Assembly (NCBI GenBank): GCA_977020255.1
Contig: CDROCS010001778.1
Location: 372,001 to 436,000 of the forward strand
DNA: 64,000 bases
Source: Obrimoposthia wandeli
Taxonomy: Eukaryota
Direction: 5' to 3'
Shown: piece by piece, positions 103-28,729 of the stretch
Position numbering within the stretch: position 1 is the stretch's first letter
Layout: every line of letters begins with the position of its first letter
Position numbers and translations under genes: made by a program
The notes under the pieces: generated by a model
Told to the model about the DNA's origin: nothing
Seen by the model: the letters and a program-made list of their open reading frames with translations, nothing else
Database searches by the model: none

Positions 103-2553
103 TCAGGTTACTTCTTTGTAACCCAAGTTATCATGACTATGTTTAACCAATTCTGCTCGCACTTCTTCCAATCGGTGCACTTTAATTGTTTGCAATTTGG
201 CCAAAACTTCTGGAGCTTCACTCGTTTCATCTAACGGTTGATTCAACGTCTCCTTAGCTTCACTAATTATCTTTTTTACATTTTCCATACTCGTAGCATT
301 CCTTGCTGCTTCTACATGATCGGTCATAGGTTGTGCGTTACACGTTTTCTCTATTGGTGTCTCATACGCTTCTAGTATTCTATTCATTAAATCATTCATC
401 TCTTCTCTCGAGTGTAGATTTTTCTCTTGTTTTGACAACGTAGATGAATTTGCCATCTTTGTATGTGGTGAATCTTTAATTATTCCCAACATTCGTTCAA
501 ATTTACTATCACTATCTTCAAAATCTATTTCGCGTCGAAGCTCGGTTTCGCGATTCCTATCACTGTCATCGCTTACATAACTAAAATTTCCTTTCGGTTT
601 CGGCGAACTCTCACGACTATTTGTCTTGTCGACATTATTATTATTATATCTACCAGAATTATTATATCTCTCAGCTCCTTGCTGTCCTACGTAATTATTG
701 TATCTCTCAGCTCCTTGCTGTCTATCTGCATAGTTATTATATCTACCTGGTGACTGTTGTCTATCTGTATACTGATTATTCAGTCTCCATGGCTGTGGAG
801 TATATCCACCACCTCTATTCCATGGCAGAGGTGAATTATATCCTCTATAATTGTTTCCAAAATTATTATTACCGAAATTATTATTTCCAAATCTGTTAGC
901 TCCGAACTCTTTACTTCTCGTACAATCTCTCGAATAGTGACCCATTTGTTTACATGTGTAACACATTATTCTCCCTCGAATATCTATCTTATTTTGTTCA
1001 TCTTCGAACTGTACTCGACGACTATTCTGTCTATTATCATAGCGTCCTCTAAAATCATTTCTTCGGAAATTCGATTCAAAACCGCTTCCTCGATTATTGA
1101 ATCTTCCGTCACTATTTCCTGTATTATTTCCAAATCGAGAGTCACTTCGCTCTCCTCTGTTGGCGTTATAATTCCTATCGTCTCCTCTCCAAGGTTGGCG
1201 ATTTCCTGAATTATCTCTATTAAATCTATTCCTGGAATCATCTCTATTTCTATTCCACGAATCATTATTATTTCTACCTCTTGAATCATCTCGATTCCTG
1301 TTCCAAGACTCACTATTATTTCTACCTCTCGAATCATCTCGATTCCTACTTCGGAAATTATCTCTATTTCCGTTACTGGATTCATCTACTTTTTCAAACT
1401 TATTTTGTCCATAATTTCGATTCTGAAAATTACTCGGTTCTGTTTTATTCACGAAGACCTTTGTCTTATCGTCGTCACCTGCAGTCATTGCGTAGATTGC
1501 CAATGCTGCATTATTCTTTATATTTTTCTCAATCTCTCTCGCCTTTCGCACGGCGTTATCAAAATCATTTGTATCCGATACTGCTAATAACACTTTAATA
1601 TCCTTTTTCAATCCTCCTCTAAATATATCTAACAAGACCTCTGCCATTTCATTTTGGTTCCGGTCATTTTCCGCTGCTTGTACTTCTGGAGCTACAGGAT
1701 TACCGTCCTGATTTCTCATTATTCTTCTTGGGTACGCTCTTGCGGCCAAGGTTCTTAAAACATACGCGTATTCATTCACGCCTTCATCATGTTTCTGTTT
1801 CCGTTCTCTCATGAGTCGCTTATTTACTTTGGCTAAGTCTCCTAATACCAATTTTCCAATAAAAGCATTTTCCAACGTTGGCCAGTCTAAACGTTCTGCT
1901 TCTGTCAAATGTTTATACACTTCAAGTGCTAATCCGGTTAAATGTGCCTGTACTCTGACACATTTTTCTTTATCGTTCCATCCTTGAACATCTGCACAAC
2001 TCGAATATTCTGCGAGGAAGTCACAAATACTTTCCTCATCTCCTTTAAACTTTGTAATCTGCAATGATCCTGAAAAGTTGGGTCTCAACGTCGCATTTAA
2101 GGCTTGTGCCAACTGCTCGGCATTCATGTCACCTACATTATTTCCTGCATTATTTTCTGCTTGAGCTCCTGGTTGAGCCATATTTTCAACTATATCTTCT
2201 TCAACTATTTCTTCAATATTATTCAATGGAACTTCCTCAATCACTACTGGATTGGCAATTTCAAATTCTTCTGGGTCTATGTCACCAAATAATTCAGTCA
2301 AATTAAAACTGCCGGTTGAAACCGCTGATTGATCAACGTCTCTTTCTGATACGTTTTCTTCGACTCTAGTTTTTTCTGTTACTTTGTTATCTGTTTGGGG
2401 AACCTGTTCAATTCGGTTAACTTTATTATTATTTATCTCTTCCTTGGGAATCTGACTTTGTCTTCTAGTATTATACGCGGGTCCTTTTCTATTATCCGTT
2501 GTCTTATCAATTATGTATTCGTTTACGATATCAATATACTTATTATTTTTATC
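103..2553 (-). CDS. gag: Ty3/gypsy LTR-retrotransposon Gag with CCHC zinc knuckle and N/R/G-rich regions
   Basis: Retrotransposon gag-like core (FKGDEESICDFL...LENAFIGKL...KQKHDEGVNEYA) and knuckle CYTCKQMGHYSRDC (about 920-966). Lies downstream of a PBS and LTR. The frame is open from 2553; the track starts it at TTG 2301. Any pol would lie left of the window. Confidence 0.9.
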   Translation of the reverse strand, partial: DKNNKYIDIVNEYIIDKTTDNRKGPAYNTRRQSQIPKEEINNNKVNRIEQVPQTDNKVTEKTRVEENVSERDVDQSAVSTGSFNLTELFGDIDPEEFEIANPVVIEEVPLNNIEEIVEEDIVENMAQPGAQAENNAGNNVGDMNAEQLAQALNATLRPNFSGSLQITKFKGDEESICDFLAEYSSCADVQGWNDKEKCVRVQAHLTGLALEVYKHLTEAERLDWPTLENAFIGKLVLGDLAKVNKRLMRERKQKHDEGVNEYAYVLRTLAARAYPRRIMRNQDGNPVAPEVQAAENDRNQNEMAEVLLDIFRGGLKKDIKVLLAVSDTNDFDNAVRKAREIEKNIKNNAALAIYAMTAGDDDKTKVFVNKTEPSNFQNRNYGQNKFEKVDESSNGNRDNFRSRNRDDSRGRNNSESWNRNRDDSRGRNNNDSWNRNRDDSRNRFNRDNSGNRQPWRGDDRNYNANRGERSDSRFGNNTGNSDGRFNNRGSGFESNFRRNDFRGRYDNRQNSRRVQFEDEQNKIDIRGRIMCYTCKQMGHYSRDCTRSKEFGANRFGNNNFGNNNFGNNYRGYNSPLPWNRGGGYTPQPWRLNNQYTDRQQSPGRYNNYADRQQGAERYNNYVGQQGAERYNNSGRYNNNNVDKTNSRESSPKPKGNFSYVSDDSDRNRETELRREIDFEDSDSKFERMLGIIKDSPHTKMANSSTLSKQEKNLHSREEMNDLMNRILEAYETPIEKTCNAQPMTDHVEAARNATSMENVKKIISEAKETLNQPLDETSEAPEVLAKLQTIKVHRLEEVRAELVKHSHDNLGYKEVT

Positions 2554-2792
2554 TTATTTCACAATTCTTATTTTACAATTTTTTATCTCTTTAATTAGTT
2601 CGAGGACAGAGTCTCCCGACTTAACCTATTCAATTAATTACTTCGAGTATCAATCCACTCGATTCTCACTTTATCAAATTTATTTACGATTTTATCTTTT
2701 TAATTAGTTCGAGGACAGAGTCTCCCGACTTAACTTATTCAATTAATTACTTCGAGTATCAATCCACTCGATTCTCACTTATAAAATTTACT

Positions 2793-3384
2793 GACTCGAG
2801 GAACAAATCCACTCGGCTTCTCAAAACCTATCGAATTCTTAACTTCGAGGAACAAATCTACCCGATTTCTCAAAAACTTATCAAATTCTTAACTTCGAGG
2901 AACAAATCTACCCGATTTCTTAACACTTATCAAATTCTTAACTTCGAGGAACAAATCTACTCGATTTCTCAAAACTTATCAAATTCTCAACTTCGAGGAA
3001 CAAATCTACTCGATTTCTCAACACTTATCAAATTCTTAACTTCGAGGAACAAATCTACTCGATTTCTCAAAAACTTATCAAATTCTTAACTTCGAGGAAC
3101 AAATCTACTCGATTTCTCAACACTTATCAAATTCTTAACTTCGAGGAACAAATCTACTCGATTTCTCAAAAACTTATCAAATTCTTAACTTCGAGGAACA
3201 AATCTACTCGATTTCTCAACACTTATCAAATTCTTAACTTCGAGGAACAAATCTACTCGATTTCTCAAAAACTTATCAAATTCTTAACTTCGAGGAACAA
3301 ATCTACTCGATTTCTCAACACTTATCAAATTCTTAACTTCGAGGAACAAATCTACTCGATTTCTCAAAAACTTATCAAATTCTT
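2793..3384. repeat. Tandem array of alternating 49/50-bp units in the retroelement leader
   Basis: Unit aacttcgaggaacaaatctactcgatttctcaa(aa/c)acttatcaaattctt, starting at 2841, 2891, 2940, 2989, 3038, 3088, 3137, 3187, 3236, 3286, 3335, plus one degenerate unit. Preceded by a duplication of about 122 bp (2577-2790). Confidence 0.95.
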
Positions 3385-3656
3385 CTGAAACTTATTCTCA
3401 ATTGTCTATATTCTTCTGCTGAAACTTATTCTCAATTTATCTGAAACTTATTCTCAATATCTGAAACTTATTCTTAATATCTGAAACTTATTCTTAATAT
3501 CTGAAACTTATTCTCAATGTCTGAAACTTATTCTTAATATCTGCACTTATTCTATTTACCTGAAACTTATTCTCAATTTTCCAAAACTTATCTGAACTTA
3601 TTCTATTCACCTGAAACTTATTCTCAATTTTCCAAAACTTATCTGAACTTATTCTA
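3385..3656. repeat. Degenerate ~20-bp tandem array (ctgaaacttattctcaatat) in the leader
   Basis: Directly visible repeated ctgaaacttattct core. Confidence 0.9.
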
Positions 3657-3682
3657 CGTGAATTCGCTGTGTCCGACGAGCT

Positions 3683-3701
3683 ATCCTCACTCGGGGCACC
3701 A
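3683..3701 (-). promoter_or_regulatory. Primer binding site complementary to elongator tRNA-Met
   Basis: Minus strand TGGTGCCCCGAGTGAGGAT matches the 3' 19 nt of metazoan elongator tRNA-Met as recalled (...ATCCTCAC[A/T]CGGGGCACCA). It lies 8 nt from the LTR end. Confidence 0.85.
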
Positions 3702-4190
3702 CTTTAATATGTTGGGGTTTCTATACGAAACTTGGTATAGAGCCTCTAAATGTGCGGAGGGCCCCAACGTGAGTTCGATTAGAAGCAGGTCTTAAAGTTG
3801 GTCGTGGCCTACTTAGTGTTATGGTTGCCTAATCTCTTGTACTATCTGAAGGTATTTGATTTGATGTCTCTTAGTCTGAAGGGTGTAAAAACAACTTGTT
3901 CTAATGTAGGAAATTGTTTATTTGTAATTCACGTAACTAACACAACAATACGTTTATGTACGTATTTCTAAAAAGTATGATAAAATTCCTAAAGGACTTC
4001 TGTAAGTCTCTACAAGAAGTGGGGATGAACCACGTATCGATTTTACGTTCAGGTGATTAAGCTTTTTAGGTTTAGTCTTCTTACTTAGGTTGGTTAATCT
4101 ATAACGCAACTCTCTTAATTTTCTTCGCTCCTACTTCTTATCTCTAGCTAAAGTTTCTTGGTTCCTTAACTCTATCTGTGTGTGTTTGAC

Positions 4191-4624
4191 CCGAATTGTC
4201 TACTGTGAACAATGGGTCTCCTAAAAACCTAATTGTCAAGATGACAATGAAAAACTTACTCCTAATTGTCAACTATGGACAATGAACGAACCGAATTGTC
4301 AGCTAGGGACAATGAGTCTTACCGAATTGTCTACTAGGGACAATGAGTATTTATCCGAATTGTCAACTAGGGACAATGAATGAACCTAATTGTCAGCTAG
4401 GGACAATGAATCTTACGGGTAAAAGTCTGGGTAGGATTCCTAATTGTCGCTGGGGACAATGAATAAATGGCCGATCTTAATTACCAACTAGGGGCAATGA
4501 TTTTGTTAAAGAGTCGGAAATCCTAATTGCCAGCTAGGGGCAATGAATCTGTGTATTAGTTTAAAATTTAGAATTACCAACAAGGGGTAATGACAGTATC
4601 CTAATTGCCAACTAGGGGCAATGA
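4191..4624. repeat. Repeat-spacer array of 12 palindromic ~25-bp units inside LTR1
   Basis: CC(T/G)A-ATTG(T/C)C-N7-G(A/G)CAAT-GA units separated by non-identical 5-29 nt spacers. Confidence 0.9.
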
Positions 4625-4766
4625 ATAGTTTAGTTGGTGTTCTTACCAGTTACTGCTACTAGTGGGACGTCCGGTGTAGGATCCGTAGGTCTTTCGGAAT
4701 CTTCTTCGAAACAGAGCTTATTACTTGTGGGAGGTTGAGTACACGCTTGAATATACTTTGACTTTG

Positions 4767-5176
4767 AATTATCTCCACTGACTTGAACCTTTAATACAAT
4801 CAATTATCTCCACTGACTTGAACCTTTAATACAATCAATTATCTCCACTGACTTGAACTTTTAATACAATCAATTATCTCCACTGACTTGAACTTTTAAT
4901 ACAATCAATTATCTCCACTGACTTGAACTTTTAATACAATCAATTATCTCCACTGACTTGAACTTTTAATACAATCAATTATCTCCACTGACTTGAACTT
5001 TTAATACAATCAATTATCTCCACTGACTTGAACTTTTAATACAATCAATTATCTCCACTGACTTGAACTTTTAATACAATCAATTATCTCCACTGACTTG
5101 AACCTTTAATACAATCAATTATCTCCACTGACTTGAACTTTTAATACAATCAATTATCTCCACTGACTTGAACTTT
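4767..5176. repeat. 35-bp minisatellite (~11.7 copies) inside LTR1
   Basis: Unit aattatctccactgacttgaacttttaatacaatc, near-perfect copies. Confidence 0.95.
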
Positions 5177-5698
5177 TTTGGACACTTGGCTTTTTGGACA
5201 CGAGAACTTAATTGTTCGATTTGTGGTCAGGGAGTTGAATCCCGTATTTGTGATTTGGGTTTCTCCTGTCTGCCTTTTATAGAGGCACTGAACGTCAATC
5301 AATTGACGGCTGCTAACGATTTGGTTCGGAAGATATCGGAGAGGCAAGGAATGGAATGTCAATCAATTGACAGCTGAAATTGAAATTTAGTTAACTGCAC
5401 GAAAATGTGCTTACCTCTTGAAATCCTTGATTGACGTTTTTAATTAACCGTTTAATTTTCTGACTTTCTCCTTAATTAATTTTTTGTCCTTTTGGTTAAT
5501 TAACTCTAAACTTTTATACATTTTCACATAATACACGACCTTCGTGGTCCTCCTAATTTTTACCCTAAATTCCACTAATTTTAATTCTAAAACTTAAAAT
5601 TAATATTTTAATTTAATTTTCAACCTTGCTTTCAAGGATTTTTATTTTAGTATTTAATCGACTAAAATATTTAAATTTCTTAATTCTCAATCCTAACA

Positions 5699-6437
5699 GT
5701 GTAAATGAATACGCTTGTGTTTTGCGAACCTTGGCAGTACGAGAGAACCCAAGTAGCAGAAGATAGTTGGAATCAAAACGAAATGATGATTCGAGGAATG
5801 GAGAAACAGAGAATAATAGGGAATTATATGAACCGAGAAATATATTTAATTAGAATAGAGATAATTCAAGAAATCGTTAACCCTGGAAAGGAGACAATCA
5901 GAATAATCGTGTAAACGGAGGATTGAATCGACTTTCGTTTCAGAAATAATTCAGGATATAGGGATGGAAAATTCATTAACCGAGAATGCAACAATTAGAC
6001 AAAATAGTCGTCGAAAAAAAATAGTTTGAGGACGACTAGAATAAAATAGATATATACGTGTAAGCAAATCGGTCATTAAGTGAGAAAGTGTACAAGATGT
6101 AAAGAATTCGGTACTTACAGTCAGTGAATAAAACTCACCCCCTGGAATAGAGGGGGCAGTTAAACTCCGCCATATCGAAGAGAAAATAACCAGTACACAG
6201 ATAGACAACAGTCACCAGGAAGATATATAATTATGCAGATAAACAGCAAGTAGCTGAGAGATACGATAATTCAGGAAGATATAATAATGTTGAAAAGACA
6301 AATAATCGTAAGAGTTCACCTCAACCAAAAGGAAATTATAATTACATAAATGATGACAGCGATAGAAACTGCGAGATGGAACTAAAACGTGAAATAGATT
6401 ATGAAGATAATGATAATAAATTCGAACGAAAATCGTG
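5699..6437 (+). pseudogene. Degenerate, internally deleted gag paralogue in opposite orientation
   Basis: gtaaatgaatacgcttgtgttttgcgaaccttggc matches gag VNEYAYVLRTLA. It then jumps to the DSWNRN region and continues to the RETELRREIDFED-like segment, with stops and frameshifts. Confidence 0.8.
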
Positions 6438-9122: not shown

Positions 9123-12100
9123 CTCTCCAGTAGATTTGCTACCGAAAAAGGACGCCTAGTCGTATGAAGAAGAAGCAACCAGATCATCCAACTCCACAAC
9201 CCCAAAAATTCCGGGAGATTTTGATAACAATACCTATGATGACTTTGTTAAATGTTTTTTTTAAAATATAATTTTTAAAATAATCAAATTTTTGATTTAT
9301 TTCTTTAGTTTATTATATTATTTTATAAATAGTATGATAGTTGAATACATATATATCTTAAAACGTTATAGGTAATACATCTATCCTCCGATTTACGCGA
9401 TGGATTGGTTCCTGAGAACCCTATGTAAATCGAAACTGTGTAAATGGGGACAAAGACAGTATAGAAAACATATGATTGGTTTCAATTTAATAAAAAACGT
9501 GTAAATCGAGATTTAAACCCCATTAAAACTAATATATTGGTTCAAAGAAAAGAGTGTAAATCGAGAAAAATCAAAAGGGAATTTATTTTAAAACCAAACA
9601 GTAATTGAAATAGTTTATGGGGACTTGGATCGATAATTGGCCAATTGGTAATCTTTTGAGATCTAGTCTTTGTCATAAAATCTGTAATCCGTAGTTGTGT
9701 TTCGATTTTTTGATAAATTTTTATATATTTTCTCATAATTGGCTACAACATGATTAAGCTCCCGTCGAAATTGAACAGAAAAATTCAATATCAGGATCAT
9801 GTTGTAGAAAATTATTTCCCATTTCCTTCCAAATTAAAGACCTGTGCGAATTATTTTTGTTGTAAGTACAACTGGTTCTTTCTCAACATTAATGTATCAA
9901 CCAGAATCGTTGTCTACGTTTATCATGTTAACCAAATCATCCTCATCTAGACCATGATCAACCATTAATTCTTCAATATTAACATTTGCAGATTCCTCAA
10001 TGCCTTCACCGCCCGATAACTATGCTAACACGCTTATTTGGGAATATTCGCCCACTATTAGTGCAACAGAATTGTGGATTTCAACCACTTCTGACAATAT
10101 TTTCTTCCAACATGCATTTAGAGGTGATAAATTTATTTCTGAATATATATAATGCTGCAAGCTGACCGCAATTTAAAATTATAAAACCTTTCCAATTATC
10201 AGTTACCTCATAGCCCATTTTACCCCAAAATGTATCGGAAGGTGTGACGTAAAGTGCTTTAAAAGTGGAAATTATTCCCTGATCTAAAGGCTGTATTAAA
10301 CATGTCATATTTGGTGGCAAAAATATAATCTGCACAATTTCATAATTCAAATCTTTTGGATGGTCGGGAGCATTATCCACAAGCAATATGACTTTATATG
10401 ACAGCTATTTTTCAGTCATATGCTTTTTGGCTTCAGGTACAAAACACTTATGAAACCATTCAGTGAAAACTGTTACAGTGACCCATGCCTTCTTGTTGGC
10501 CATCCAATGAATACGAAGGCTTTTCACTTTCATTACTTTAAATGCTCGTGGTGTTAACGATTTATTGATAACCAAGTGCTTTATTATACGATCTCCAGAT
10601 TACCACAGAACAAGAATGTTACACGATCTTTTGCAGCTTTATGCCCGCAAGCTACATTTTGAGATTTGGCTAAATACGTTAACTATGACATTTTTTCACA
10701 ATCAACCGGTCTCATCCGCATTAAACACCTGCTTGGGAGTGTAGGAATTGACCTAAATAGTTTGTGCAAGTTTTGCTGGATATCCTTTTGCAGCTTTTAA
10801 TTCACCGGATGCTAGTTCACCTTTTGTTATAAGATTATATAAAGTTTGATTGCGGTAGTATCGATAGGTATTCTTTTAGTGTTTGATATTCTATCCATAT
10901 CAGTAACGCTTTTTCCAAAGCTTAAATATTAATATACCTCACATGTGAAGAAGTTATCTTATTCGTATCAGAACCGGCTGCTACACTCTTTTTAATATTT
11001 ATTTCATTGTTTTAATCGTAGCTTCATTCATACGATATGATTTGGCAACCACTGTTGAACTCTCTCTACGTTGATCAAAAAAATATTTTTTTGTTTCCTA
11101 AGATTTAACTTTTTGTTTGAGTGTGTTTCCCACTTTCTTTTGACATTATGGTGTTCTAAAAAATTTCATATACATTTTATAAGAAAAAAATTAAAATCTT
11201 ACGTTTTATTACTTACTACTGTTATAAATTTTCTTAAAAAATATGAAGAAAAAAACCAAAACAACTATCACAGGACTGTCTTGAAATTAAACTGGAAACG
11301 TAGGACCACAGATTCTAATTAAACAAATTTAAAAAAACTATGCCTATTAGAATTATACATTTTCAAAAAATATGTAAACATAAACAAAACACAGTGTAAA
11401 AATATACCGTGCTAATCGAGCGATGGGGTGAATTATTCAATTGTTAGGATTAGGTTTTGACTAAAATTAAATAATTAATTGATTTTATAGTGAAATAAAA
11501 ATCCTTGAAAGCAAGGTTATAATTAAAATAAAAAATTATAGTAAAATTAAAATAATCAAAATTAGAAAGGTAAATTAAATATATTAAGGACCACGAAGGT
11601 CATGTGTGATGCGTAAGTATTTATAGAGGTTGAAATCTATTAAAAGGGCCCCAAAAAAGGGATTACGTTAAAGAAGTAAATTAAACGAAGAAGAACGTGA
11701 AAAAGAATTAACTCAATAATAAACAGTTAGACAAGGCCAGCTAGAGAATTCCAAATTAAGAAATTAGGAAAAGTCAACAAAGTCGATTCCAAAGAAGAGT
11801 GCACGCAGAACAAACGAAGCTAATTCCCAAGCAAACAAGAAGAATCCACTAGCGCCATTAGCAATCGATTCTTAGTCACCGAGCCAGCCGCCAGATCTCC
11901 TCAACTCCACAACTCGTTGGAGGTAAGTGGCACTTAACCTAAGTGACTTAGTTAAATTGTTATTTAGGTAACGTATAAAAACAGAGCGAAGGGAAAAGAA
12001 AGCGCACAACAACGAATTAATATTGAAAAGAGAGAAAATCGAAATACGCTCCCAGGAAAATCCCATCGTTGGCCAGCGGAGAATCACGTTCATAGCATCC

Positions 12101-12411
12101 CGAATTAGAAGAAAAGAAAAGTATTAAGTTAATTTTTGGAAATTGAAACTTAATAAAATCTCATCGCTAGGCAGTAGAGAGCGTCGAGTAACGGGAAGTT
12201 ACCTCAAATCAGAAGGGCCGTAAAGGAAATTCGATTCCCAAGTTCGATCGGAGTAACGGAAAGAAACGCCGAGACGGAACAGCAGCTGAAAACAAATCGG
12301 ATCAGACAACGTGAGGAGCCAAGACAGGAGACTCGAATCTAGATCTGGTGGACTAATCGCTATATTAGGAAGAGGTGAGAAGTAGTCAGGTGGAATCATA
12401 TAAGATCGAGT

Positions 12412-13026
12412 CTTGAATTATTATAACATAATTTTGCATTGACGTTTGAAAGTAATCTTATTGAACTTGAATTATTATAACATAATTTTGCATTGAATTT
12501 TGAAAGTAATACTTATTGAACTTGAATTATTATAACATAATTTTGCATTGAATTTCGAAAGTAATCTTATTGAACTTGAATTATTATAACATAATTTTGC
12601 ATTGAATTTCGAAAGTAATCTTATTGAACTTGAATTATTATAACATAATTTTGCATTTAAATTTCGAAAGTAATCTTATTGAACTTGAATTATTATAACA
12701 TAATTTTGCATTGAATTTCGAAAGTAATCTTATTGAACTTGAATTATTATAACATAATTTTGCATTGAATTTCGAAAGTAATCTTATTGAACTTGAAGTA
12801 TTATAACATAATTTTGCATTGAATTTTGAAAGTAATACTTATTGAACTTGAATTATTATAACATAATTTTGCATTGAATTTCGAAAGTAATCTTATTAAA
12901 CTTGAAGTATTATAACATAATTTTGCATTGAATTTCGAAAGTAATCTTATTTGAACTTGAATTATTACAACGTAATTTTGTATTGAATTTTGAAATTATT
13001 ACGAAATAATATTACATTAAATTTGA
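12412..13026. repeat. 54/55-bp minisatellite (~11 copies) inside LTR2
   Basis: Unit ttgaacttgaattattataacataattttgcattgaatttcgaaagtaatctta. Confidence 0.95.
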
Positions 13027-13397
13027 ACTATTGTGGAAGTACAAGAGAAGTTTTGATTTCGTACAAATTATAAACTACTAACAGTCTCTACAAATTAGAG
13101 CCAGTGTTTTTTTGTTGAAATTAATAATTTACTAAAAGCCTCTATAAATTAGAGCAAAATCTTGGTTCGTTATAGTTCTTAAGAAAAAGAAGTTGTCCGT
13201 TTTAAGTAAGGAAGTTGATCTAGCGAATTAGATTGAGATCAAAGAGTTTGATTTAGAAATCTCATTAAAACCACCCTTAAATTAAAATTGATACGTGGTT
13301 CATTCCCACTTGTGGAGAGACTTACAGAAGTCTTAGGAATTTTATTGTCATTTTTTAGAATACGTACTTAAACGTATTGTTTCGTGTTAGTCTAGTG

Positions 13398-15910
13398 CAG
13401 GGTTTCTCAACGGGGGCCACACGAGCCAAACAAAAATAAAAAATTAACACCCCTGTTTTCACTGGGTTAAACACTTTGATGGCTGCACACGTGTGCCACA
13501 AATAAATGTTTGACATGGAATAAAAACAGAGTATAGACTTCTAGATACATATGGACGCGACGCGTCAACTTATTGCGTGGGCGTACCAGCCCAATGAGGG
13601 CCGACGGTAAAACATCATAATATGCCTTTGCAAAAATATCATCGCGCTACAAAAGTTTGTGTGGCGGATGTGGCATGTGCATAATCATCATCCTGAGTAA
13701 TCTATGGACTAAAATCAGTAATTGTGTTGTGTCTCAGCGTGTGAAGAGAAGAGTGTCACACTTCATGTGTACATGCCCAAAATACGCTGCCATTGTAAAA
13801 TGCTACCTACCTAACTCACAAACGTGCACTTGTGTTTGTTTTGAATGAGTCAGTGGTTGATCTCTTTCTTCTTGTTTGTCATTCACCATATCTGAATGTA
13901 CACACATAGGACCTTGTTTTTCTAATTGTCTTTTTGCTCACGTTACCCTTGTAAACAATTTTCAATTCTGATTTTTAGTTGACAATGAGCAGCAAGAAAA
14001 GGTGCAGACAGTATAATTGTGATTATTTACGTTTCGGATTCATTGCAAGCCAAAGTAATTCTCAACTTCCTGAGTGTATTGTCTGTAACACTGTGCACTC
14101 CAATGACTCAATGCGACCATCAAAACTTGAGGCTCATCTCCAAAAGAAGCATCCTGACATTGCAACAAAACCGCGCGCATATTTTACTCAGCTTCGTGAT
14201 CAGAGGACAACAGCCTCAACCCAATTGCGAAAATTTGTGGTTCCTCAGAACTCTACTTCTGGCTTAACAGCATCATATAAAATTGCATATTTAATGGCGA
14301 AACAGGGTAGAGCGCATACACTGGCAGAGCAGTTGATTAAACCTGCTATCTTGGAAGCATTTAATGTTGCCAATGTATCAAATCCACAGTCAGTGCTCGC
14401 ATCGATTCCTCTCTCAAATGACACCATATCGCGACGTATTTCTGATATGGCTGCAAATGTGGAATTCATCATCACAAATGATCTTCACAATTCACAATTC
14501 TCATTGACGCTTGATGAAAGCACATTTTCGAACCAAGCGGTTGTTTTGGCATTTGTCCGTTTCGTCAAGGATAGACAACTCAAGGAAGAGTTGTTGTTTA
14601 TCAAAACTGTGGTAAACACGACAGGCGAATCTGTGTATAACACAGTCTGTAAGTACTTCGAGGATCATGGTATAGACAAGAAAAACATGATATCCATTTG
14701 CACTGATGGTGCCCCATCTATGGTGGGTAAAAAGCAAGGTGTTGTCGGTCGCTTTCTGCAAGACAGGACCATCTTTACAATGCACTGTGTACTTCACTGT
14801 GAGAATTTGGTCGCGAAAGACTTGGGCGGAACAACTTTGATGGATTGTCTTAAAATTGTTGTCTCAGCAATTAACAAAATAAAGGCAAGAGCTTTACAAG
14901 ACCGCCTTTTTCGTGAAGCTTGTCAAGATGAGCACTTTAAATGCTTGCTTTACTATACCGAGGTACGGTGGCTCTCGATGGAAAACTGTCTGTCGCGATT
15001 TGTCAATCTGACAGAGTTGTTGAATTCTTGAGCGAAAGAGATGCTAATCTCACAAACAAACTGATTGAAAGCAAAAGCACCATTTTATATCTGGAGGCAA
15101 TATTTGGAAAACTAAACGAGCTTAACATGGTTATGCAGTCACAAAATTTCAATATTGTTGATGCCAAGCGAATTATCAAATCATTTATGAACAAATTGAT
15201 CGTTTGGGCAGCAAGTATTCGTGCTGGTAACTTCAGTCATTTCCCAAAATTGGCCAACGATGTTTGCAATCCAGATTTGCGAGACATCATTTTAGTGCAC
15301 TTGGAAGTCCTGTATACAAACTTTCAGCTAAGATTTGAGGATTTAATTGTGTTGACTATTCCAGCATATATTGATTGTCTTCACGTCATGACAGTCGATC
15401 AAATCATCGATTTTCCTGAGAACATTCAAATGGAGTTATGTCAAGTTCTCAGAGATGACAAAATGATCAGCATGTCAAAGCAGAATTGGGTGGCAGCATG
15501 GCTGGAAAATTCAGAAATTTATCCGGAAATTTTCAAGAAGGTTTATCCCTTTATTGTTAATCTACCGACGTCGGTGTAAGCTGAGAAGGGGTTCTCAGTT
15601 GTCCTTCATTCGTTCGCAAAACAGCGGATGAATCTCAAGTTGTGTGACAATGCAGAAATCCGTTTACGACTTTCTGAAATTGCTCCAGATTTTACTACAC
15701 TTGTTGGCAAACGCCAAGCGCAAGGGTCACACTAACATTTTTTAAATATAGTTTTCTCATTGATTATCTTTTTGAATGTTTCCATGACAGAATAGTATAA
15801 TTGAAAACAATACGTATACGATGTAATCTTTTTGTCCATAGTAGAGGGGGGCCACAGCAATTTGCTGCAAACTAAAGGGGGCCGTGGTGAAAAAAGGTTG
15901 AGAAACCCTG
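13398..15910 (+). mobile_element. hAT (Buster-type) transposon, 2513 bp
   Basis: Perfect 14-bp TIRs CAGGGTTTCTCAAC. 8-bp TSD GTCTAGTG (13390-13397, 15911-15918) with central TA. Subterminal GGGGGCCAC motifs at both ends. Confidence 0.95.
13982..15735 (+). pseudogene. Buster/ZBED5-like hAT transposase with one frameshift and one premature stop
   Basis: BED-like finger (CIVC...MRPSKLEAHLQKKH), LTLDEST, ICTDGAPSM, HCVLHCENL and EVRWLS motifs, and C-terminal AEKGFS...RQAQGSH. Frameshift near 15000-15030 and TAA at 15577-15579. Confidence 0.9.
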
Positions 15911-16822
15911 GTCTAGTGTATTAATAAATAAACGATTTCCTACAACTAGAAGCATTGTTCTAAACCCTTCAGATTAAGATTAAAACAACAAACCTTTAGA
16001 TAAGAATTGAGACAGGCAACCATAACATTAAGTAGGCCACAACCATCCTTAAGTCCTGCTTCTATAGAACTCACGTTGGGGCCCTCCACATTCAAGAGGA
16101 TCTATAAGTTTCATATAAAAACCCCAACACAATTTAAGTCCCGTGTAAAAGTGAAAACGTGTAAAAATGTACTGTGTAAATCGGGAAATAGGTATATACA
16201 CAAAAAAGTACAATTTATCAATATTGATTTTAAATAGGCTTCATTTTATTTAAAGTAATATTTTCAAAATTCAAATGATTATTAAATATTTGTTTGTTTT
16301 GTTGTAGAACCATTTTTTACATATTTATAATAAAATAGCATATTAGGAATAATTATATTCATAATTCTAATTAAATATTTTATATAATTTCATGTAATGG
16401 AATTTTACTCGCTTACTTTAAAATTTATAAATTCTTTAATTATATATTAAAAAGAAAAAATTTTTAAATATTGGTAATATTAAATTTATTAATTTAAAAT
16501 AATGTCATTGCATTAAAAGTATTTCAGAAATTATATAAATAAGTTCAGCAATTAATTAATTTAATTATTTTCAAATAATGGAATTTGAATATATAAAGGA
16601 GCTGATAGCACAGATTAAGGAAAGTGTGATAAAAAAAGTTAGGAGACCTGCCTAAGAGGTTTTAAATCAGTAGTAAATTTTGATATGGTGAAGTACTGGG
16701 AAAATTAAAAACAAATGCATTTAGGATTTATTTTTTTGTTATTTATAAACGAATATTCTATTAATTTGAGGCTTTATTAATGAATGGAGATTATATTATA
16801 AATTAATTATGTGTTATGCAAG

Positions 16823-18824
16823 TGTTAGGATTAGGTTTTGTTAAAATTAAATAATTAGTTAAATTTATACTAAAATGAAAATCCTTGAAAAAAGGTTAAA
16901 ATTAAATAAAATTAAAATTAAAAATTAAAATGTAAAAAGTTAAAGGAAAATTGAATATTAGAGGACCACGAAGGTCGTGTGAAATGCGTTAATATATATA
17001 ATGTTAGTTTAAAAAAAAAAGGGCAAAAAATTAATTAATAAAAACCAAGGGAAATTAAGTAACGAAGAAATCCAGTCGACGTCAGCAAAAAAGGTAAGCA
17101 CATTTTAAGTGCCAATCGATTACCTACAGTTGCAGGAAATTAGCCAAGCCGAGAAGAAGTGATTGACAGTCTACGTCAACCCAGAAGAGAGAAATTGTCA
17201 ATTTGGACTCAGCCCACTTGTCCGCACACCGAGAAGAAAGAGACTATATAAGTCTACTAAATTAGTAATTAACAAACGGAAAAAACCAAACTAAAGAAAA
17301 AAGGAGCAGAAATCGCGTCAGAGCAACAACGCAGGTGGTTTTATTGAGACTAATCTACTATAGTCCACTAGAAATCGTTCCACAGAAAAGGACTCAACTA
17401 TTCTCCTGACAACCGTGATCGCTTACAACTATTCTCCTGACAACCGTGATCGCTTACAACTATTCTACTGACAACCGTGATCGCTTACAACTATTCTACT
17501 GACAACCGTGATCGCTTACAACTATTCTACTGACAACCGTGATCGCTTACAACTATTCTACTGACTACCCGTGATCGCTCACAGGAGATCCCATCAATTT
17601 AAATAGGTGAGAGTACGCGAAGTACATTTATAAAATTGTGTAAAATATTGGTGAGAGTACGCGAAGTACATTTATAAAATTGTGTAAAATATTGGTGAGA
17701 GTACGCAAAGTACATTTATAAAATTGTGTAAAATATTGGTGAGAGTACGCGAAGTACATTTATAAAATGGTGTAAAATATTGGTGAGAGTATGCAAAGTA
17801 CATTTATAAAATTGTGTAAAATATTGGTGAGAGTACGCAAAGTACATTTATAAAATTGTGTGAAATCATTTTGAATTTACTTACCATTTGAGTTTTTGAG
17901 AACTAAATTTTATTAAAAGAAAAAGTATAAATTTGACCGTTAAAGTTGAAATCATTTTGAATTTACTTACCATTTGAGTTTTTGAGAACTAAATTTGATT
18001 AAAAGAAAAAGTATAAATTTGACCGTTAAAGTTGAAATCATTTTGAATTTACTTACCATTTGAGTTTTTGAGAACTAAATTTGATTAAAAGAAAAAGTAT
18101 AAATTTGACCGTTAAAGTTGAAATCATTTTGAATTTACTTACCATTTGAGTTTTTGAGAACTAAATTTGATTAAAAGAAAAAGTATAAATTTGACCGTTA
18201 AAGTTGAAATCATTTTGAATTTACTTACCATTTGAGTTTTTGAGAACTAAATTTGATTAAAAGAAAAAGTATAAGTTGATTGTTAAAGTTAAAGATATTT
18301 TGAATTTACTTACAATTTGAGTTTTTGAGACGAAATTTGATTGAAAGAAAAAGTATAAATTTGATTGTTAAAGTATAGTTGTTTTACATTAACCCTATTT
18401 TAAAAACGTATTAAAAGTGAAATTGATTTGAAAAATCTATAACTTGAGCTTATTCGCGAGTTAGAGGAACGACTCTAAAATCTCGATTACCCTTAACATA
18501 AAATCGATACGTGGTTCATCCCCACTTGTGTAGAGACTTACAGAAGTCTTAGGAATTTTTACTATACTTTTTAGAAGATACGTACGTAAACGTTTAGTCT
18601 AGTGTGTTACCAATAAACGATTTCCTACATTAAAAAAAACGTTGTTTTACACCCTTCAGAGTAAGAGACATAAAAAACAAACACCTTCAGATAAGAAATT
18701 GAGACAGGCAACCATAACATTAAGTAGGCCACGACCAACTTTAAGACCTGCTTATATTCGAACTCACGTTGGGGCCCTCCGCACACAAGAGGATCTGTAC
18801 AAGTCTCGTATAGAAACCCCAACA
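16823..18824 (+). mobile_element. Solo LTR (LTR3, ~2.0 kb)
   Basis: TGTTAGGA...CCCCAACA termini. Flanks caag/aaag could be a 4-bp TSD with one mismatch. End blocks are homologous to LTR1 and LTR2. Confidence 0.88.
17396..18375. repeat. Three abutting tandem arrays in LTR3 (31-bp, 44-bp and 86-bp units, ~6 copies each)
   Basis: 17396-17582 aactattctcctgacaaccgtgatcgcttac; 17606-17861 ggtgagagtacgcgaagtacatttataaaattgtgtaaaatatt; 17862-18375 an 86-bp unit starting at 17862, 17948, 18034, 18120, 18206. Confidence 0.95.
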
Positions 18825-23443: not shown

Positions 23444-25111
23444 CAGTAAGTTCCGGATTATCCGAACATATATGTTTTTCATTATAATTTTGGTGTTTGA
23501 GTATGCACTGTAGTTAACTTCTTCGTCCTCATTTTCTGAGAGCTCTTCAGGTTCACTTCATGGCTATAGCTCTTTCTATGATTTCATTTCAATAATTGCA
23601 GAAATGTAAAACAGTTTTGTATCTTTAAAAAATTTAGACATGTGGAGCCTATCAAAATTTTTCTCGGAAAATATCAATTTACACGTGAGCGCTTTTTGTG
23701 TCACCTTTTTAGGTTTTCCAATACAGATTGATCCACTGATTGGACAAGTGACGTAACATTGGCGACATACAATAGATTTTTTTCACAAAGCAATCCGAAG
23801 AAACATCTAGAACTTGCATTGAACTCCTCGCTTTGGGCAGGATAATTTTATTGAACAATATCACTGCTTTTTCGGTAACTATTACTCTACTGGTGGGGAT
23901 ATTCTTCTCCCTTAGTGGACGTAACCAAATATACAGTAAGACACAAAGTTTTACAAAAGTACAGGTTTCCATAATCTTTAAAGTCGCCGAGCACTGTCCC
24001 TTTTCCTGCTGATCACGTTTGCAAATCTTCAGCTTTTCAAAAGAAGCTTTTAAAACACAAATTGTGCTGCGCCGAACTACGTTCTTTTCAGAAATGTGTC
24101 CATAGCTGTGTTGGGGTTTCTATTAATCTAAATTCTCGTACGGAGGCCCCCAACGTGAGTTCTGAGGTGATAGGGCTTACATATGGACGTGGCCTACCCA
24201 TTCTAATTTATGGATGTTTGTCTCGCTTATCTGAAGGTTTTCTATTTGTTGTTGTATCGTGTATAAAGATTGGGTTTAGGATAACAAGAGGGACCCCAAA
24301 ACTATTGTTGTGGGGTGTGGAGCTGATGCATTGAGCCGGTTAGGCCGATGTGGATTTCATATTCAAAAAGGGTCTGTGAATAGATAAGAGTTAAAATCAA
24401 CAAAGGTAAGCTGGAATCAATCGACACAGACGATACTTCTCCTCTTAAAAATCCTATGCATATCTCAGAATTTGGATAACCGTCACGTTGGTTCATTCCA
24501 GTTCGTTGTTTTGAATTTCATCCAATTCGATTATACAAAACAGAATTCGCATTGTATGTTAAGGTTAAAATATATTTAATTAAGTACACTGATTTTAAAC
24601 ACACTAAATTGAACTAGCTAACAAATGACTACACACTATGACTTTACAATTTACTCGATAAGGATACTTTTTACTAAACATCGAGTAAACTTTATTGATT
24701 TCCACTTTAACTCTTTCAATTGATGCTTTATGATCCTATATATATATCCAACTTACAGTTTGGAAATCTCGGTTTAACACTTTCAATTATACTTTTATAA
24801 TCGGTTTACTTTAAACTGCCATCTATTCTTTTACAATTTTAACCAACCTTTATAACTTCGTAAAGGATAATTACAATACAACAGGGTAATCTATAGCTTA
24901 AGTTTATCATTGAACGTTAAAACAACTTTTTCTTTCGTTGAATGACATTTTTAACTTAAAAAAAATAATGCATTCCACAAAATAATACATGTTTATTGTA
25001 ATTATTTCTTTTTTATTATTTAATGTATTTATAGACTTTTTTTAAAAATTAAGCATGTTAAGATAGTTGAGAATTTGGATAATCAGAAGCCTGATAATCG
25101 GGAATTTAGTG
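23444..25111 (-). mobile_element. Second pogo/Tigger relic interrupted by LTR4
   Basis: TIRs cagtaagttccggattatccg / rc cactaaattcccgattatcag with TA on both sides. Remnants NVTSLVQSVDQSV (DDE_1) and N-terminal KEKVVLTFNDKLKL. Confidence 0.75.
24109..24883 (-). mobile_element. Shorter related solo LTR (LTR4); right boundary approximate
   Basis: tgttggggtttc...ggcccccaacgtgagttc block homologous to the LTR1-3 3' end. Putative other end is tacaaca. No clean TSD. Confidence 0.65.
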
Positions 25112-25879: not shown

Positions 25880-27300
25880 AATAATTTTTATCGAATAGAA
25901 TTGATGTACATTTGAAAATTATGTTTTTTTCCATCAAATTACGATATTTGTGTCAAGAAATTTCCCCATAGAGTTTAATTTTTTTAAACATTTAAATTAA
26001 CAACAAAAACATTTTTTGTAAAATATTTCTTTCGCAGAACTTTCAATCATACATGGAAAGAAATAATATTTAATTATGCTACTAGATTTACGGAGTTGTC
26101 AAGAAAGATAGCTTGATTTTATTTTATTATTATTGTAAATAAGCAACAGCAATTGATCTATAATAATATGAACTTTGCTATTTTTAAGTCCATACAGTTT
26201 ACAAAGTTATTTCAATATTATTTCAAAATTATTTCTTATTATATTATTAATCGATTAATTAAAATACAGCAAAATGGATGACTTGCAGAAGGATAGCAGA
26301 CAAAATATGAACACTGATCATTTGTCCAGTGTTTCAATTAATGCAGTTGCTGGAGAACGAGAACTCAAGGAGGAATTTGGTGGTATAACAATGCATCGAA
26401 CAACTTTCTTGACCATTTATAAACGGTTTGATGAAGTAGAAAGCATTCTGCGTAAAATTCCACAAGACAGACAATGAAGTGTCAGAACAGAACAAAATAA
26501 GAACATTTTCTACAGCAGATTATCTTGAATCATGCAGAAAGTTAACACTTAATACTGAAACAAGCCCCTCATCAATTTTACGATTATTACATGATCTAAA
26601 GATCAAACCATACATTCTTCAACTTGTCAATAAGTTATTAGCGGCTGATTTTGATTGTCGATTTAAGGTGTGTGATAGATTACTTGGTGTGATCGAGCAG
26701 AACCCTGGTATGATGGACAAAATTTTGTGGAGTGATGAGTCGAAATTTAAATTGAGTGGTACAGTCAATAGACACAATTATGTCTATTGAGCTACAGAAA
26801 ATTCATAAAGTACTATTCCACATCATAGCCAAAGTCCCAGTGTGATGGTAGGCTCGAATATTTTCCAGACAAATTGTGAACTACTTCGTTAATATGTTTT
26901 CCTCTTAAAAATCCTTACTAGTGTTTGTGCAGGATGGTACGTCTTCCCATTTTGCACACATTGTTCAAAACACACTGGATATAATCTGTCCCATCACTGG
27001 AGTGCGGTTCCATTGAATGGACTCCTCATTCTTCCTATTTAACTCCATACAACTTTTATGGGCCTCCCTAAAAGACCGAGTTTTTGCAAGATAACCATAA
27101 ACTCATGATGGTTTGAGATTTTAATTACAAAGGAGGCAGCAATCATTACACCTAATGGAGATCAATGCCTTTATTTTTAGTAAAATACTGATTGATCATT
27201 TGTTCTATTGTCAGTGTTTCAGCTGATTTTTGTAACTTGATTTTTGATATTTGAAAATATTAAATTTCGACTTACAAATTTATCCAACATATGACCAAAT
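25880..27300 (+). mobile_element. mariner-like (maT/rosa-type) transposase relic
   Basis: ILWSDESKFKLSGTVNRHNYVY, then QDG-like and P..P.LTP..F remnants, with multiple stops and frameshifts. Confidence 0.7.
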
Positions 27301-28508: not shown

Positions 28509-28729
28509 AATAACAAATGTCAAATAATATTCTGCTCATTACTTAGTCGGGGGAAAAAGTAAAAATCAACTCTTGACAAAATTTAACTTAATGAAAAAAT
28601 CCAATCTTTGATAAGATAAATATTTGAAAAAAAGGAATTACTTATAAATTATAAATGCATAAAATACATTTGCAATTCTGAGTTGAGTTATCAGGAGAAA
28701 GTACGAGTCACAGTGGTTCAATGGATACA

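What the first reader, a model, noticed from the sequence alone, without database searches (positions are those of the whole stretch)
4191..4624. CRISPR-like repeat-spacer array of 12 covarying palindromes inside an LTR
Seen: repeats start at 4191, 4228, 4261, 4291, 4322, 4355, 4385, 4439, 4476, 4522, 4570 and 4600. Each is ATTGTC-N(5-7, mostly 7)-GACAAT, separated by different 5-29 nt spacers. The arms change together along the array: ATTGTC/GACAAT to ATTGCC/GGCAAT to ATTACC/GGTAAT. Simple slippage would homogenise spacers as in the neighbouring 35-bp array, and would not produce paired changes. Inference: a selected array of RNA hairpins (protein-binding, export or packaging element, or small-RNA precursor) or of inverted sites for a dimeric DNA binder (ACAAT is an HMG/Sox core). 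It is not a prokaryotic CRISPR.
Basis: partly seen in the sequence, partly recalled or inferred. Interest (0 to 1): 0.78.

Follow-up and report, generated by a model that had tools for sequence, protein, structure and literature searches.

The report
Hairpin-repeat array inside a retrotransposon LTR
A 435-base stretch inside the long terminal repeat of a gypsy-type retrotransposon in an animal genome holds 12 copies of a small hairpin-forming unit whose two arms have stayed complementary; it is a lineage-specific repeat array of a known general kind, not a CRISPR, and its function is unproven.

Summary
Twelve ~26-nt units lie at 4191-4625, each with 6-nt arms around a 5-7-nt loop, and nowhere else in the 64 kb. 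The array sits inside a 1,989-bp LTR (3710-5698). This is the 5' LTR of a Ty3/gypsy-type element whose sense strand is the minus strand, followed by a primer-binding-site-like stretch, a repeat-rich leader and an intact gag (2181-106). On the sense strand all 72 stem positions pair, two of them as G.U; on the plus strand 70 do. Two stem positions changed on both sides. The spacers are not all unrelated: the array is four copies of a three-unit block. That makes it hard to trace the paired changes to one ancestral duplication. Two related solo LTRs in the window carry unrelated, non-palindromic arrays in the same place, so the array is lineage-specific and dispensable for the family. Best reading (about 0.4): repeated short hairpins in the element's RNA that serve as a multivalent protein-binding platform. 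Rivals are a DNA-level array of factor sites and a functionless by-product whose arms are kept complementary by template switching. I did not fetch external copies; that step is referred.

The parts
4191..4625 (-). The array. Twelve units of about 26 nt (4 nt flank, 6-nt arm, 5-7-nt loop, 6-nt arm, 3 nt flank) at 4191-4216, 4228-4251, 4261-4286, 4291-4316, 4322-4347, 4355-4380, 4385-4410, 4439-4463, 4476-4501, 4522-4547, 4569-4594 and 4600-4625. They are organised as four blocks of three units, starting at units 1, 4, 7 and 10.
3710..5698 (-). LTR-A, the 5' LTR of the element (1,989 bp). The plus strand reads TGTTGGG at 3710 and CCTAACA ending at 5698, so in sense orientation the ends are TGTTAGG...CCCAACA. 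This fits the published LTR end pattern.
   Evidence: end pattern from PMC3601003
5402..5698 (-). Conserved 5' module of the LTR (start of U3), shared at about 70 % with LTR-B and LTR-C.
5293..5372 (-). Two copies of a 14-nt perfect palindrome with one flanking base on each side (5293-5308 and 5357-5372), just 5' of the TATA box in sense orientation. The flanking pair differs symmetrically between the copies (C..G against T..A).
5276..5281 (-). TATAAA on the sense strand, 417 nt from the LTR 5' end. LTR-C has one at 422 nt and LTR-B at 532 nt.
4767..5177 (-). Neighbouring 35-bp array, 11.7 copies, 99 % matches, with no inverted repeat in its unit.
3710..4085 (-). Conserved 3' module of the LTR (79-85 % identical to LTR-B and LTR-C). 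It holds the conserved AATAAA (sense strand 3922 down to 3917), 212 nt from the LTR 3' end as in LTR-C.
3685..3701 (-). Primer-binding-site-like stretch. It begins with TGG 8 nt after the LTR end, so its complement ends in CCA. This is an inference; no tRNA was available for comparison.
2581..3656 (-). Repeat-rich leader between the primer-binding-site-like stretch and gag: 20/51-bp arrays (3419-3656), a 49-bp array (2796-3384) and a 109-bp repeat (2581-2790). The last two carry 16 units with arms TCGAG/CTCGA and 10-11-nt loops of three kinds.
103..2181 (-). gag, 692 codons from the first ATG plus stop, with no breaks. It has a capsid-like N-terminal domain, a low-complexity N/R/D/S-rich middle and one CCHC zinc knuckle. 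pol runs off the left edge of the window.
5699..6429 (+). Older, related gag fragment in the opposite orientation, into which the element inserted. It is broken: cut at its 5' side by LTR-A, with at least one frameshift and three stops in the aligned part.
11442..16129 (+). LTR-B, a solo LTR of a related lineage (4-bp target duplication CAAT), interrupted by a hAT-type transposon (13398-15909). Its centre holds a 54-bp array and no unit of the hairpin array.
16823..18824 (+). LTR-C, a solo LTR of a related lineage (flanks CAAG/AAAG). Its centre holds 30-, 47- and 86-bp arrays and no unit of the hairpin array.

Best explanation
What it is (about 0.9). The array is a degenerate 12-unit tandem array in the hypervariable middle of the 5' LTR of a Ty3/gypsy-type retroelement. 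The element's sense strand is the window's minus strand. The array grew by tandem duplication of a roughly 30-nt unit and then by duplication of a three-unit block. It is older than this insertion and was carried by a replicating lineage.

How it works (about 0.4, inferred). Each unit acts as a short hairpin (6-bp stem, 7-nt loop) in the element's single-stranded sense RNA. The array lies between the only conserved sense-strand TATA box and the conserved poly(A) signal. By the usual LTR grammar it is therefore in R, and in any case it is in a part of the LTR that is copied into genomic RNA. Twelve similar hairpins with conserved loop and flank bases would give a multivalent platform for an RNA-binding protein, either the element's own zinc-knuckle Gag or a host factor. 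Pairing is what is kept; the spacers are free.

Shown: the anatomy, the strand, the pairing counts, and the absence of the array from related LTRs. Inferred: transcription of the array, hairpin formation in vivo, and protein binding.
For: LTR bounds, primer-binding-site-like stretch, leader and intact gag on the minus strand.

Gag type. A profile of relatives hits the dArc1/2 and PNMA2 capsids, and 10 of 20 relatives match Retrotrans_gag.

Pairing.
- 72 of 72 stem cells pair on the sense strand, against 70 of 72 on the plus strand. Both one-sided changes are G.U on the sense strand.
- Two stem positions carry changes on both sides, in 5 cells.
- Under a simple neutral model, a stem hit four times, as in unit 11, stays fully Watson-Crick with probability 0.002-0.011.

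Three-unit blocks. TCT stands at spacer positions 4-6 after units 1, 4, 7 and 10 only, and units 4, 7 and 10 share an identical loop. Unit 10 differs from its block counterpart, unit 7, at exactly the two paired positions. One inherited double change therefore cannot explain all C-G units.

Core against spacer. Arms are 0.87 identical, loops 0.77 and flanks about 0.74, while inner spacers sit at the shuffled level. The invariant bases next to the arms are not complementary to each other, which speaks against a purely symmetric DNA site.

Age. Gag is unbroken over 692 codons while the units have diverged about 14 % in their cores, so the array diversified before this insertion.

A second set of 16 short inverted repeats lies in the leader. 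Its commonest variant (4 units, at least 2 events) is again G.U on the sense strand.

Literature: residual conservation in long R regions is linked to stem-loops (PMC3601003).
Against: - The hairpins are weak: bare stems are -1.3 to -5.1 kcal/mol on the sense strand.
- In context each unit's own stem has a mean pair probability of 0.21 (0.30 with span limited to 40), because arms of neighbouring units compete. The minimum-energy folds are not 12 separate hairpins.
- Stems are slightly more stable on the antisense strand.
- The strand bias rests on two changes here. One leader unit goes the other way.
- LTR-B and LTR-C carry unrelated, non-palindromic arrays in the same place, so the array cannot be essential to the family.
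- An R of about 1.36 kb would be unusually long. The start site is not known, so the array may be in U3.
- There is no Rfam match.
- Compensation can arise without selection (PMC8794818).
- No other copy of this sublineage was examined.
Confidence: 0.4

Rival explanations
1. DNA-level array of binding sites. Each unit is an inverted-repeat site for a dimeric or multi-domain host DNA-binding protein. The array would work as an enhancer or insulator module of the LTR, in the manner of U3 enhancer repeats or the gypsy 5'-UTR insulator. Complementarity of the arms would be kept by template switching or by a requirement for two equal half-sites.
For: Tandem repeats that regulate transcription are common in retroviral and retrotransposon LTRs (PMC3601003). 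The gypsy insulator is 12 motifs in 340 bp (PMC3383448), close in number and span to this array. The whole 26-nt core is conserved, not only the arms. A related palindrome pair sits right next to the TATA box, where factor sites are expected, and it also shows a symmetric difference. The RNA hairpins are weak.
Against: A symmetric site gives no reason for both arms to change together (one search gives the chance level). The invariant bases flanking the arms are not symmetric. The array lies downstream, not upstream, of the only conserved sense-strand TATA. Spacing between units (30-54 nt) keeps no helical phase. No factor could be tested.
Confidence: 0.27
2. No function. The array would be a by-product of reverse transcription or replication in a part of the LTR that tolerates any filler. 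Hairpins pause polymerases and favour template switching and misaligned strand transfer, which duplicates them with imprecise junctions. Switching within the inverted repeat copies one arm onto the other, which mimics compensatory change.
For: Three related LTRs carry unrelated arrays in the same interval, with nearly the same TATA-to-AATAAA distance (1,359, 1,367 and about 1,433 nt). Template switching is documented to create and repair stems (PMC8794818). Tandem arrays inside transposable elements are widespread (PMC12628747, abstract only). Only a few independent paired events are seen.
Against: Cores stay 73-87 % alike while inner spacers are at the random level, which needs either constraint or a special copying mechanism. 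All 12 units still pair, and no decayed unit can be detected in the long spacers or flanks. The array survived in a lineage with an intact gag.
Confidence: 0.27
3. Small-RNA precursor array or CRISPR-like immune memory.
For: Only the repeat-spacer look. Nested transposon fragments in both orientations surround it.
Against: Stems are 6 bp, far too short for microRNA-type precursors. The spacers are short, unequal and partly homologous to each other. The host is an animal (type IV collagen), and the array is part of a retroelement. There is no Rfam match.
Confidence: 0.03

Closest known systems
Gypsy 5'-UTR insulator of Drosophila (12 Su(Hw) motifs in about 340 bp; PMC3383448)
   Same: Twelve short conserved motifs separated by variable spacers, within about 0.35-0.43 kb, in the non-coding 5' part of a Ty3/gypsy-type element. 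Such arrays are dispensable and lineage-specific; relatives such as gtwin have fewer motifs.
   Different: This array is inside the LTR, upstream of the primer-binding-site-like stretch, not in the leader. Its units are inverted repeats with paired changes.
Tandem enhancer repeats in U3 of retroviruses and of plant elements such as Tnt1 (PMC3601003)
   Same: Tandem repeats inside an LTR that vary between lineages.
   Different: This array lies downstream of the conserved TATA box. The spacers have decayed while the cores are kept, and the units are hairpin-forming.
Stem-loops of long retroviral R regions (PMC3601003)
   Same: It lies between TATA and the poly(A) signal, and both halves of a stem are conserved.
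   Different: Known cases are single, longer, family-wide stem-loops. This is 12 copies of a 6-bp hairpin, absent from sister lineages.
Tandem arrays inside transposable elements that seed satellites (PMC12628747)
   Same: A hypervariable array in the non-coding part of an LTR element. Several arrays lie side by side, some very young (35-bp, 99 %).
   Different: Here the unit core is kept and pairs, while the spacers decay.
Hairpins created and maintained by template switching (PMC8794818)
   Same: Both arms of short inverted repeats change together.
   Different: That work concerns RNA genes. No event can be reconstructed here without more copies.
Prokaryotic CRISPR array
   Same: Partly palindromic repeats alternating with dissimilar spacers.
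   Different: The host is an animal and the array sits in a retroelement LTR. Repeats are 26 nt and diverged. Spacers are 4-28 nt, unequal and partly related. There are no cas genes.

Membership tests
Tandem array inside an LTR of an LTR retroelement | Lies between the two ends of an LTR (TG...CA short inverted repeats), next to a primer binding site and gag | tested here: met
   The LTR spans 3710-5698 and its ends fit the published pattern. Two more copies have 4-bp target duplications. A TGG-starting stretch lies 8 nt after the LTR end, and gag is on the same strand.
Tandem array inside an LTR of an LTR retroelement | Head-to-tail repeated units | tested here: met
   TRF gives period 30 at 81 % matches for the centre. 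There are 12 covariance-model hits in one orientation and a three-unit higher-order period.
Tandem array inside an LTR of an LTR retroelement | Varies between related LTRs | tested here: met
   LTR-B and LTR-C share only the end modules and carry other arrays.
Ty3/gypsy-type retroelement | Gag with a capsid fold of the Ty3/Arc/PNMA type and a CCHC knuckle | tested here: met
   zf-CCHC scores 26.3 bits. A profile of relatives hits PNMA2 (5e-06) and dArc1 (8e-06). Retrotrans_gag is found in 10 of 20 relatives. The window's own domain alone matches no Pfam family.
Ty3/gypsy-type retroelement | pol domain order and reverse-transcriptase phylogeny | not testable with these tools
   pol lies beyond the left edge of the window, and fetching the rest was left out.
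Conserved structured RNA element | Base pairs supported by covariation beyond what relatedness gives | tested here: inconclusive
   72 of 72 cells pair, and 2 pairs carry double changes. The cell-based measures beat 500 of 500 shuffles, but the pair-count measure is reached by 74 of 500. The units are related copies within one locus.
Conserved structured RNA element | The structure is the favoured fold of the transcript | tested here: not met
   The mean probability of a unit's own stem is 0.21-0.30. The minimum-energy folds pair neighbouring units instead.
Conserved structured RNA element | Member of a described RNA family | tested here: not met
   Rfam gives no hit at gathering score for the whole window, and none up to E = 1 for 2100-5800.
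U3 enhancer repeats | Located upstream of the core promoter | tested here: inconclusive
   The array is downstream of the only conserved sense-strand TATA (5281). The start site is unknown, and a start inside the 3' module cannot be excluded.
U3 enhancer repeats | Bound by a transcription factor | not testable with these tools
   No motif library or binding data were at hand, and motifs recalled from memory were not used.
Gypsy-type insulator | Located in the leader, downstream of the primer binding site | tested here: not met
   The array is inside the LTR, 480 nt or more upstream of the primer-binding-site-like stretch.
Gypsy-type insulator | Units match the Su(Hw) motif | not tested
CRISPR array | Near-identical repeats of fixed length with unique spacers of similar length | tested here: not met
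   Repeats are 73-87 % alike. Spacers are 11-35 nt arm to arm and partly homologous at a three-unit offset.
CRISPR array | Prokaryotic or viral context with cas genes | tested here: not met
   The window holds type IV collagen exons, a hAT transposon and gag.
microRNA-type precursor cluster | Stems of about 20 bp or more | tested here: not met
   Stems are 6 bp, at -1.3 to -5.7 kcal/mol.

The most novel reading that the evidence does not exclude
The array is a natural cassette of 12 protein-binding RNA hairpins in the terminal repeat (R) of an invertebrate gypsy-type, possibly envelope-bearing, retroelement. It would be present at both ends of the genomic RNA and used as a multivalent handle for packaging, export or escape from silencing. 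The 16 hairpin units in the leader would be a second cassette of the same design. That would be a modular 'array of handles' strategy not described for LTR elements.
Probability: 0.18. Interest if true: 0.6.

Novelty: new variant of a known kind. Interest (0 to 1): 0.32.

Why it matters
Tandem arrays in LTRs and leaders of retroelements are usually filed as filler or as enhancer repeats. This one keeps a pairing-competent core in all 12 units while its spacers decay. The same element carries a second set of short inverted repeats in its leader. If other copies bear this out, it would be a compact natural case for asking whether repeated weak hairpins are selected in retroelement RNA or are generated and repaired by polymerase template switching. 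That bears on how new cis-elements, and later satellites, arise inside mobile elements. If it is not borne out, this is one more lineage-specific LTR minisatellite.

Tried and rejected
Searches that found nothing or nothing usable:
- The word-index protein search with gag, once whole and once restricted to residues 30-270, gave no hits. The low-complexity middle and the length band probably explain this.
- The exhaustive search then found only distant relatives, 27-39 % identical. No near copy of this element's gag is in that library.
- A cluster look-up of ten relatives gave no names or organisms.
- gag's N-terminal domain alone matched nothing meaningful in the Protein Data Bank; only the profile did.
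- ARAGORN found no tRNA gene to compare with the primer-binding-site-like stretch.
- Rfam gave nothing.

Ideas rejected:
- The long spacers are not detectably decayed units.
- The arrays in LTR-B, LTR-C and the 35-bp and 20-bp arrays are not palindromic.
- The units keep no helical phasing.
- Depletion of poly(A) signals as a test for transcription was inconclusive. There is no canonical AATAAA on the sense strand between 5281 and 3922, but every 35-bp unit carries ATTAAA.
- I first read LTR-B as followed by a primer-binding-site remnant. It is a 4-bp target duplication.
- CRISPR and small-RNA readings are rejected (see rivals).

Full report
**1. Context**

The window is animal DNA of about 30 % G+C. 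It is not taken for human. Exons of a type IV collagen gene, with collagen repeats and the C4 domain, lie at 34156-38858. The left 19 kb is a nest of mobile-element pieces.

On the minus strand an unbroken 692-codon ORF (2181-106, stop at 105-103) has a CCHC zinc knuckle. Its N-terminal domain has only distant relatives among 1.84 billion representatives: 307 at E up to 1e-3, and the listed hits are about 23-40 % identical. Ten of 20 aligned relatives match Retrotrans_gag. A profile of them hits the PNMA2 and Drosophila Arc capsids. The ORF is therefore a Ty3/gypsy-type gag.

Four of nine long relatives also carry a class III viral fusion glycoprotein domain. This fits the envelope-carrying gypsy-type elements described across invertebrates (PMC13524379). 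It concerns the relatives; this element's own 3' part is outside the window.

**2. The LTR**

The plus strand reads TGTTGGG from 3710 and CCTAACA ending at 5698. In sense (minus) orientation the LTR runs from 5698 down to 3710, and its ends fit the general pattern published for LTRs (PMC3601003).

Eight nt after its 3' end comes a TGG-starting stretch (3701-3685) whose complement ends in CCA. I read it as a primer binding site by inference, since no tRNA was available. A 1.5-kb leader full of tandem arrays follows, and then gag.

To the right of 5698 lies an older gag fragment in the opposite orientation. It is cut by this insertion and carries at least one frameshift and three stops.

Two more LTRs of related lineages lie in plus orientation:
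- LTR-B spans 11442-16129. It has the target duplication CAAT and is split by a hAT transposon at 13398-15909, which has 14-bp inverted ends and an 8-bp duplication.
- LTR-C spans 16823-18824.

The three LTRs share only about 300 bp at the 5' end and about 375 bp at the 3' end, at 70-85 % identity. All three have a sense-strand TATA box about 420-530 nt from the 5' end and a conserved AATAAA about 200-212 nt from the 3' end. The interval between them is nearly equal in length in the three (1,359, 1,367 and about 1,433 nt) and is filled by unrelated tandem arrays.

The finding lies in that interval of LTR-A. By the usual LTR grammar that is R, if the conserved TATA is the promoter. It would be U3 if transcription starts in the 3' module. 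Either way the array is copied into genomic RNA. The start site is not known.

**3. The observation**

In detail: there are twelve units, all in one orientation and nowhere else in the window.

- Arms: ATTGTC/GACAAT in 7 units, ATTGCC/GGCAAT in 2, ATTACC/GGTAAT in 1.
- Units 1 and 9 have a change on one side only.
- Loops are 7 nt in 10 units.
- Four nt before and three nt after the arms are also conserved, so the core is about 26 nt.
- Mean pairwise identity is 0.87 for the arms, 0.77 for the loops and about 0.74 for the flanks. The inner spacers (4-28 nt) are at the level of shuffled sequence.
- The long spacers and the array's flanks are not detectably decayed units.

**4. Descent**

The array is a decayed tandem repeat, not a set of independent inserts. 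TRF reads the centre as a 30-nt repeat.

Spacers three units apart are related. Those after units 1, 4, 7 and 10 all have TCT at positions 4-6 and none of the other seven does. Units 4, 7 and 10 have identical loops, and units 3, 6, 9 and 12 have nearly identical loops. The array is thus four copies of a three-unit block of 94-137 nt.

This matters for the covariation. The C-G pair at stem position 5 occurs in units 9-12, which belong to all three unit classes. Unit 10 differs from its block counterpart, unit 7, at exactly the two paired positions, while the class-specific loop between them is kept. One inherited double change therefore cannot account for all four units. Either several paired changes occurred or very patchy conversion is needed. 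The block model itself rests on few characters, and I rate it likely, not certain.

**5. Pairing**

On the sense strand 72 of 72 stem cells form standard pairs (two G.U); on the plus strand 70 of 72 do. Two of the six pairs carry changes on both sides, in five cells. RNAalifold predicts the same helix unaided.

Under a simple neutral model, a stem hit four times stays fully Watson-Crick with probability 0.002-0.011, and one hit twice with probability 0.03-0.07. The shuffle controls are inflated by relatedness. By the more robust pair-count measure, 74 of 500 shuffles do as well.

I conclude that complementarity of the arms has been actively kept. The data cannot say whether by selection or by a templated mutation process.

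**6. Evidence against stable RNA hairpins**

- Each stem is worth only -1.3 to -5.1 kcal/mol on the sense strand and slightly more on the antisense strand.
- In the context of the array the probability of a unit's own stem averages 0.21, or 0.30 if pairing is limited to 40 nt, because arms of neighbouring units compete.
- The global folds are only moderately better than shuffles, with z of -2.95 (sense) and -3.81 (antisense), and they are not 12 hairpins.
- Hairpins of this size are functional elsewhere only when a protein holds them. That statement rests on general knowledge and was not tested here.

**7. The rest of the element**

The leader holds 16 further units with arms TCGAG/CTCGA and three kinds of 10-11-nt loop. 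Four of them (at least two events) have a G.U on the sense strand. One has a terminal mismatch that would pair only on the antisense strand.

Just 5' of the TATA box stand two copies of a 14-nt perfect palindrome (5293-5308 and 5357-5372). Their flanking bases differ symmetrically.

Short inverted repeats with symmetric changes are therefore a theme of this element's non-coding DNA, in both transcribed and promoter-proximal positions. That fits a general mutational process at least as well as it fits a specific RNA function. The 35-bp, 20-bp, 54-bp, 30-bp, 47-bp and 86-bp arrays have no such inverted repeats.

**8. Age**

The unit cores differ by about 14 % while gag is unbroken over 692 codons. 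The array must therefore have diversified before this insertion, in a lineage that was still replicating, where selection on the element could act. This is an inference.

**9. Explanations**

(a) RNA hairpin platform, about 0.4. It explains the pairing, the G.U bias, the asymmetric invariant flanks and the contrast between core and spacer. It is weakened by the thermodynamics, by the absence of the array from sister LTRs and by the unknown start site.

(b) DNA array of factor sites, about 0.27. It has the best precedent: U3 repeats, and the gypsy insulator with 12 motifs in 340 bp (PMC3601003, PMC3383448). It needs an extra mechanism to explain the paired changes.

(c) Functionless by-product with template-switch repair, about 0.27. 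It is supported by the interchangeable arrays and by PMC8794818. It explains the decayed spacers around intact cores less well.

(d) Small-RNA precursor or CRISPR-like memory, about 0.03.

**10. Comparison and novelty**

The general kind, a tandem array in the non-coding part of an LTR element, is well known. The particular features are new as far as my searches of the held literature went: a core that is kept and pairs in all units, paired changes, a three-unit higher-order period, and a second inverted-repeat array in the leader. That is not a proof of absence. I rate it a new variant of a known kind, of modest interest.
Noticed in passing
window 13398-15909 (+), duplications at 13390-13397 and 15910-15917: A hAT-type DNA transposon of 2,512 bp with perfect 14-bp terminal inverted repeats and an 8-bp target duplication, inserted into solo LTR-B. 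Its ORFs (13979-15579) give only weak DUF659/DUF4371 hits and overlap in two frames.
   Followed up: partly
window 2581-3384 (minus sense): The leader holds 16 units with arms TCGAG/CTCGA and three different 10-11-nt loops. Four units have G.U on the sense strand. One unit has a terminal mismatch that pairs only on the antisense strand.
   Followed up: partly
window 5293-5308 and 5357-5372: Two copies of a 14-nt perfect palindrome 12 and 76 nt 5' of the sense-strand TATA box. The bases flanking the palindrome differ symmetrically (C..G against T..A). LTR-C has similar short motifs before its TATA.
   Followed up: partly
LTR-A 5281-3922, LTR-C 17245-18612, LTR-B 11974-15927: The distance from TATA to AATAAA is nearly the same in three related LTRs (1,359, 1,367 and about 1,433 nt after removing the hAT insert), although the interval is filled by unrelated tandem arrays. 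A length constraint on this interval is possible.
   Followed up: no
window 11442-16129 and 16823-18824: Two solo LTRs of related lineages lie 693 bp apart in the same orientation, with flanks CAAT/CAAT and CAAG/AAAG.
   Followed up: yes
window 900-1300 (minus strand, inside gag): The middle of Gag is a long N/R/D/S-rich low-complexity stretch with repeated short peptide motifs, matching the 24/48-bp tandem repeat that TRF reports at 1204-1370. It swamped the word-index protein search.
   Followed up: no
proteins P0008, P0025, P0030, P0119 (relatives of gag): Four of nine long gag relatives carry a class III viral fusion glycoprotein domain (PF24664; one also matches Glycoprotein_B). The family therefore includes envelope-bearing retrovirus-like elements of invertebrates.
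   Followed up: partly
window 34156-38858 (+): Three long exons of a type IV collagen gene (collagen repeats and the C4/NC1 domain) in a 50 % G+C island.
   Followed up: no
window 25893-26748 and 28735-29600: An inverted duplication of about 870 bp at 89 % identity, with arms about 2 kb apart. Weak matches to the LTR 3' module lie nearby (24127-24252, 28409-28513).
   Followed up: no
window 50898-51952: A 164-nt segment is repeated three times (81-82 %) at irregular spacing, in a region of strong negative GC skew.
   Followed up: no
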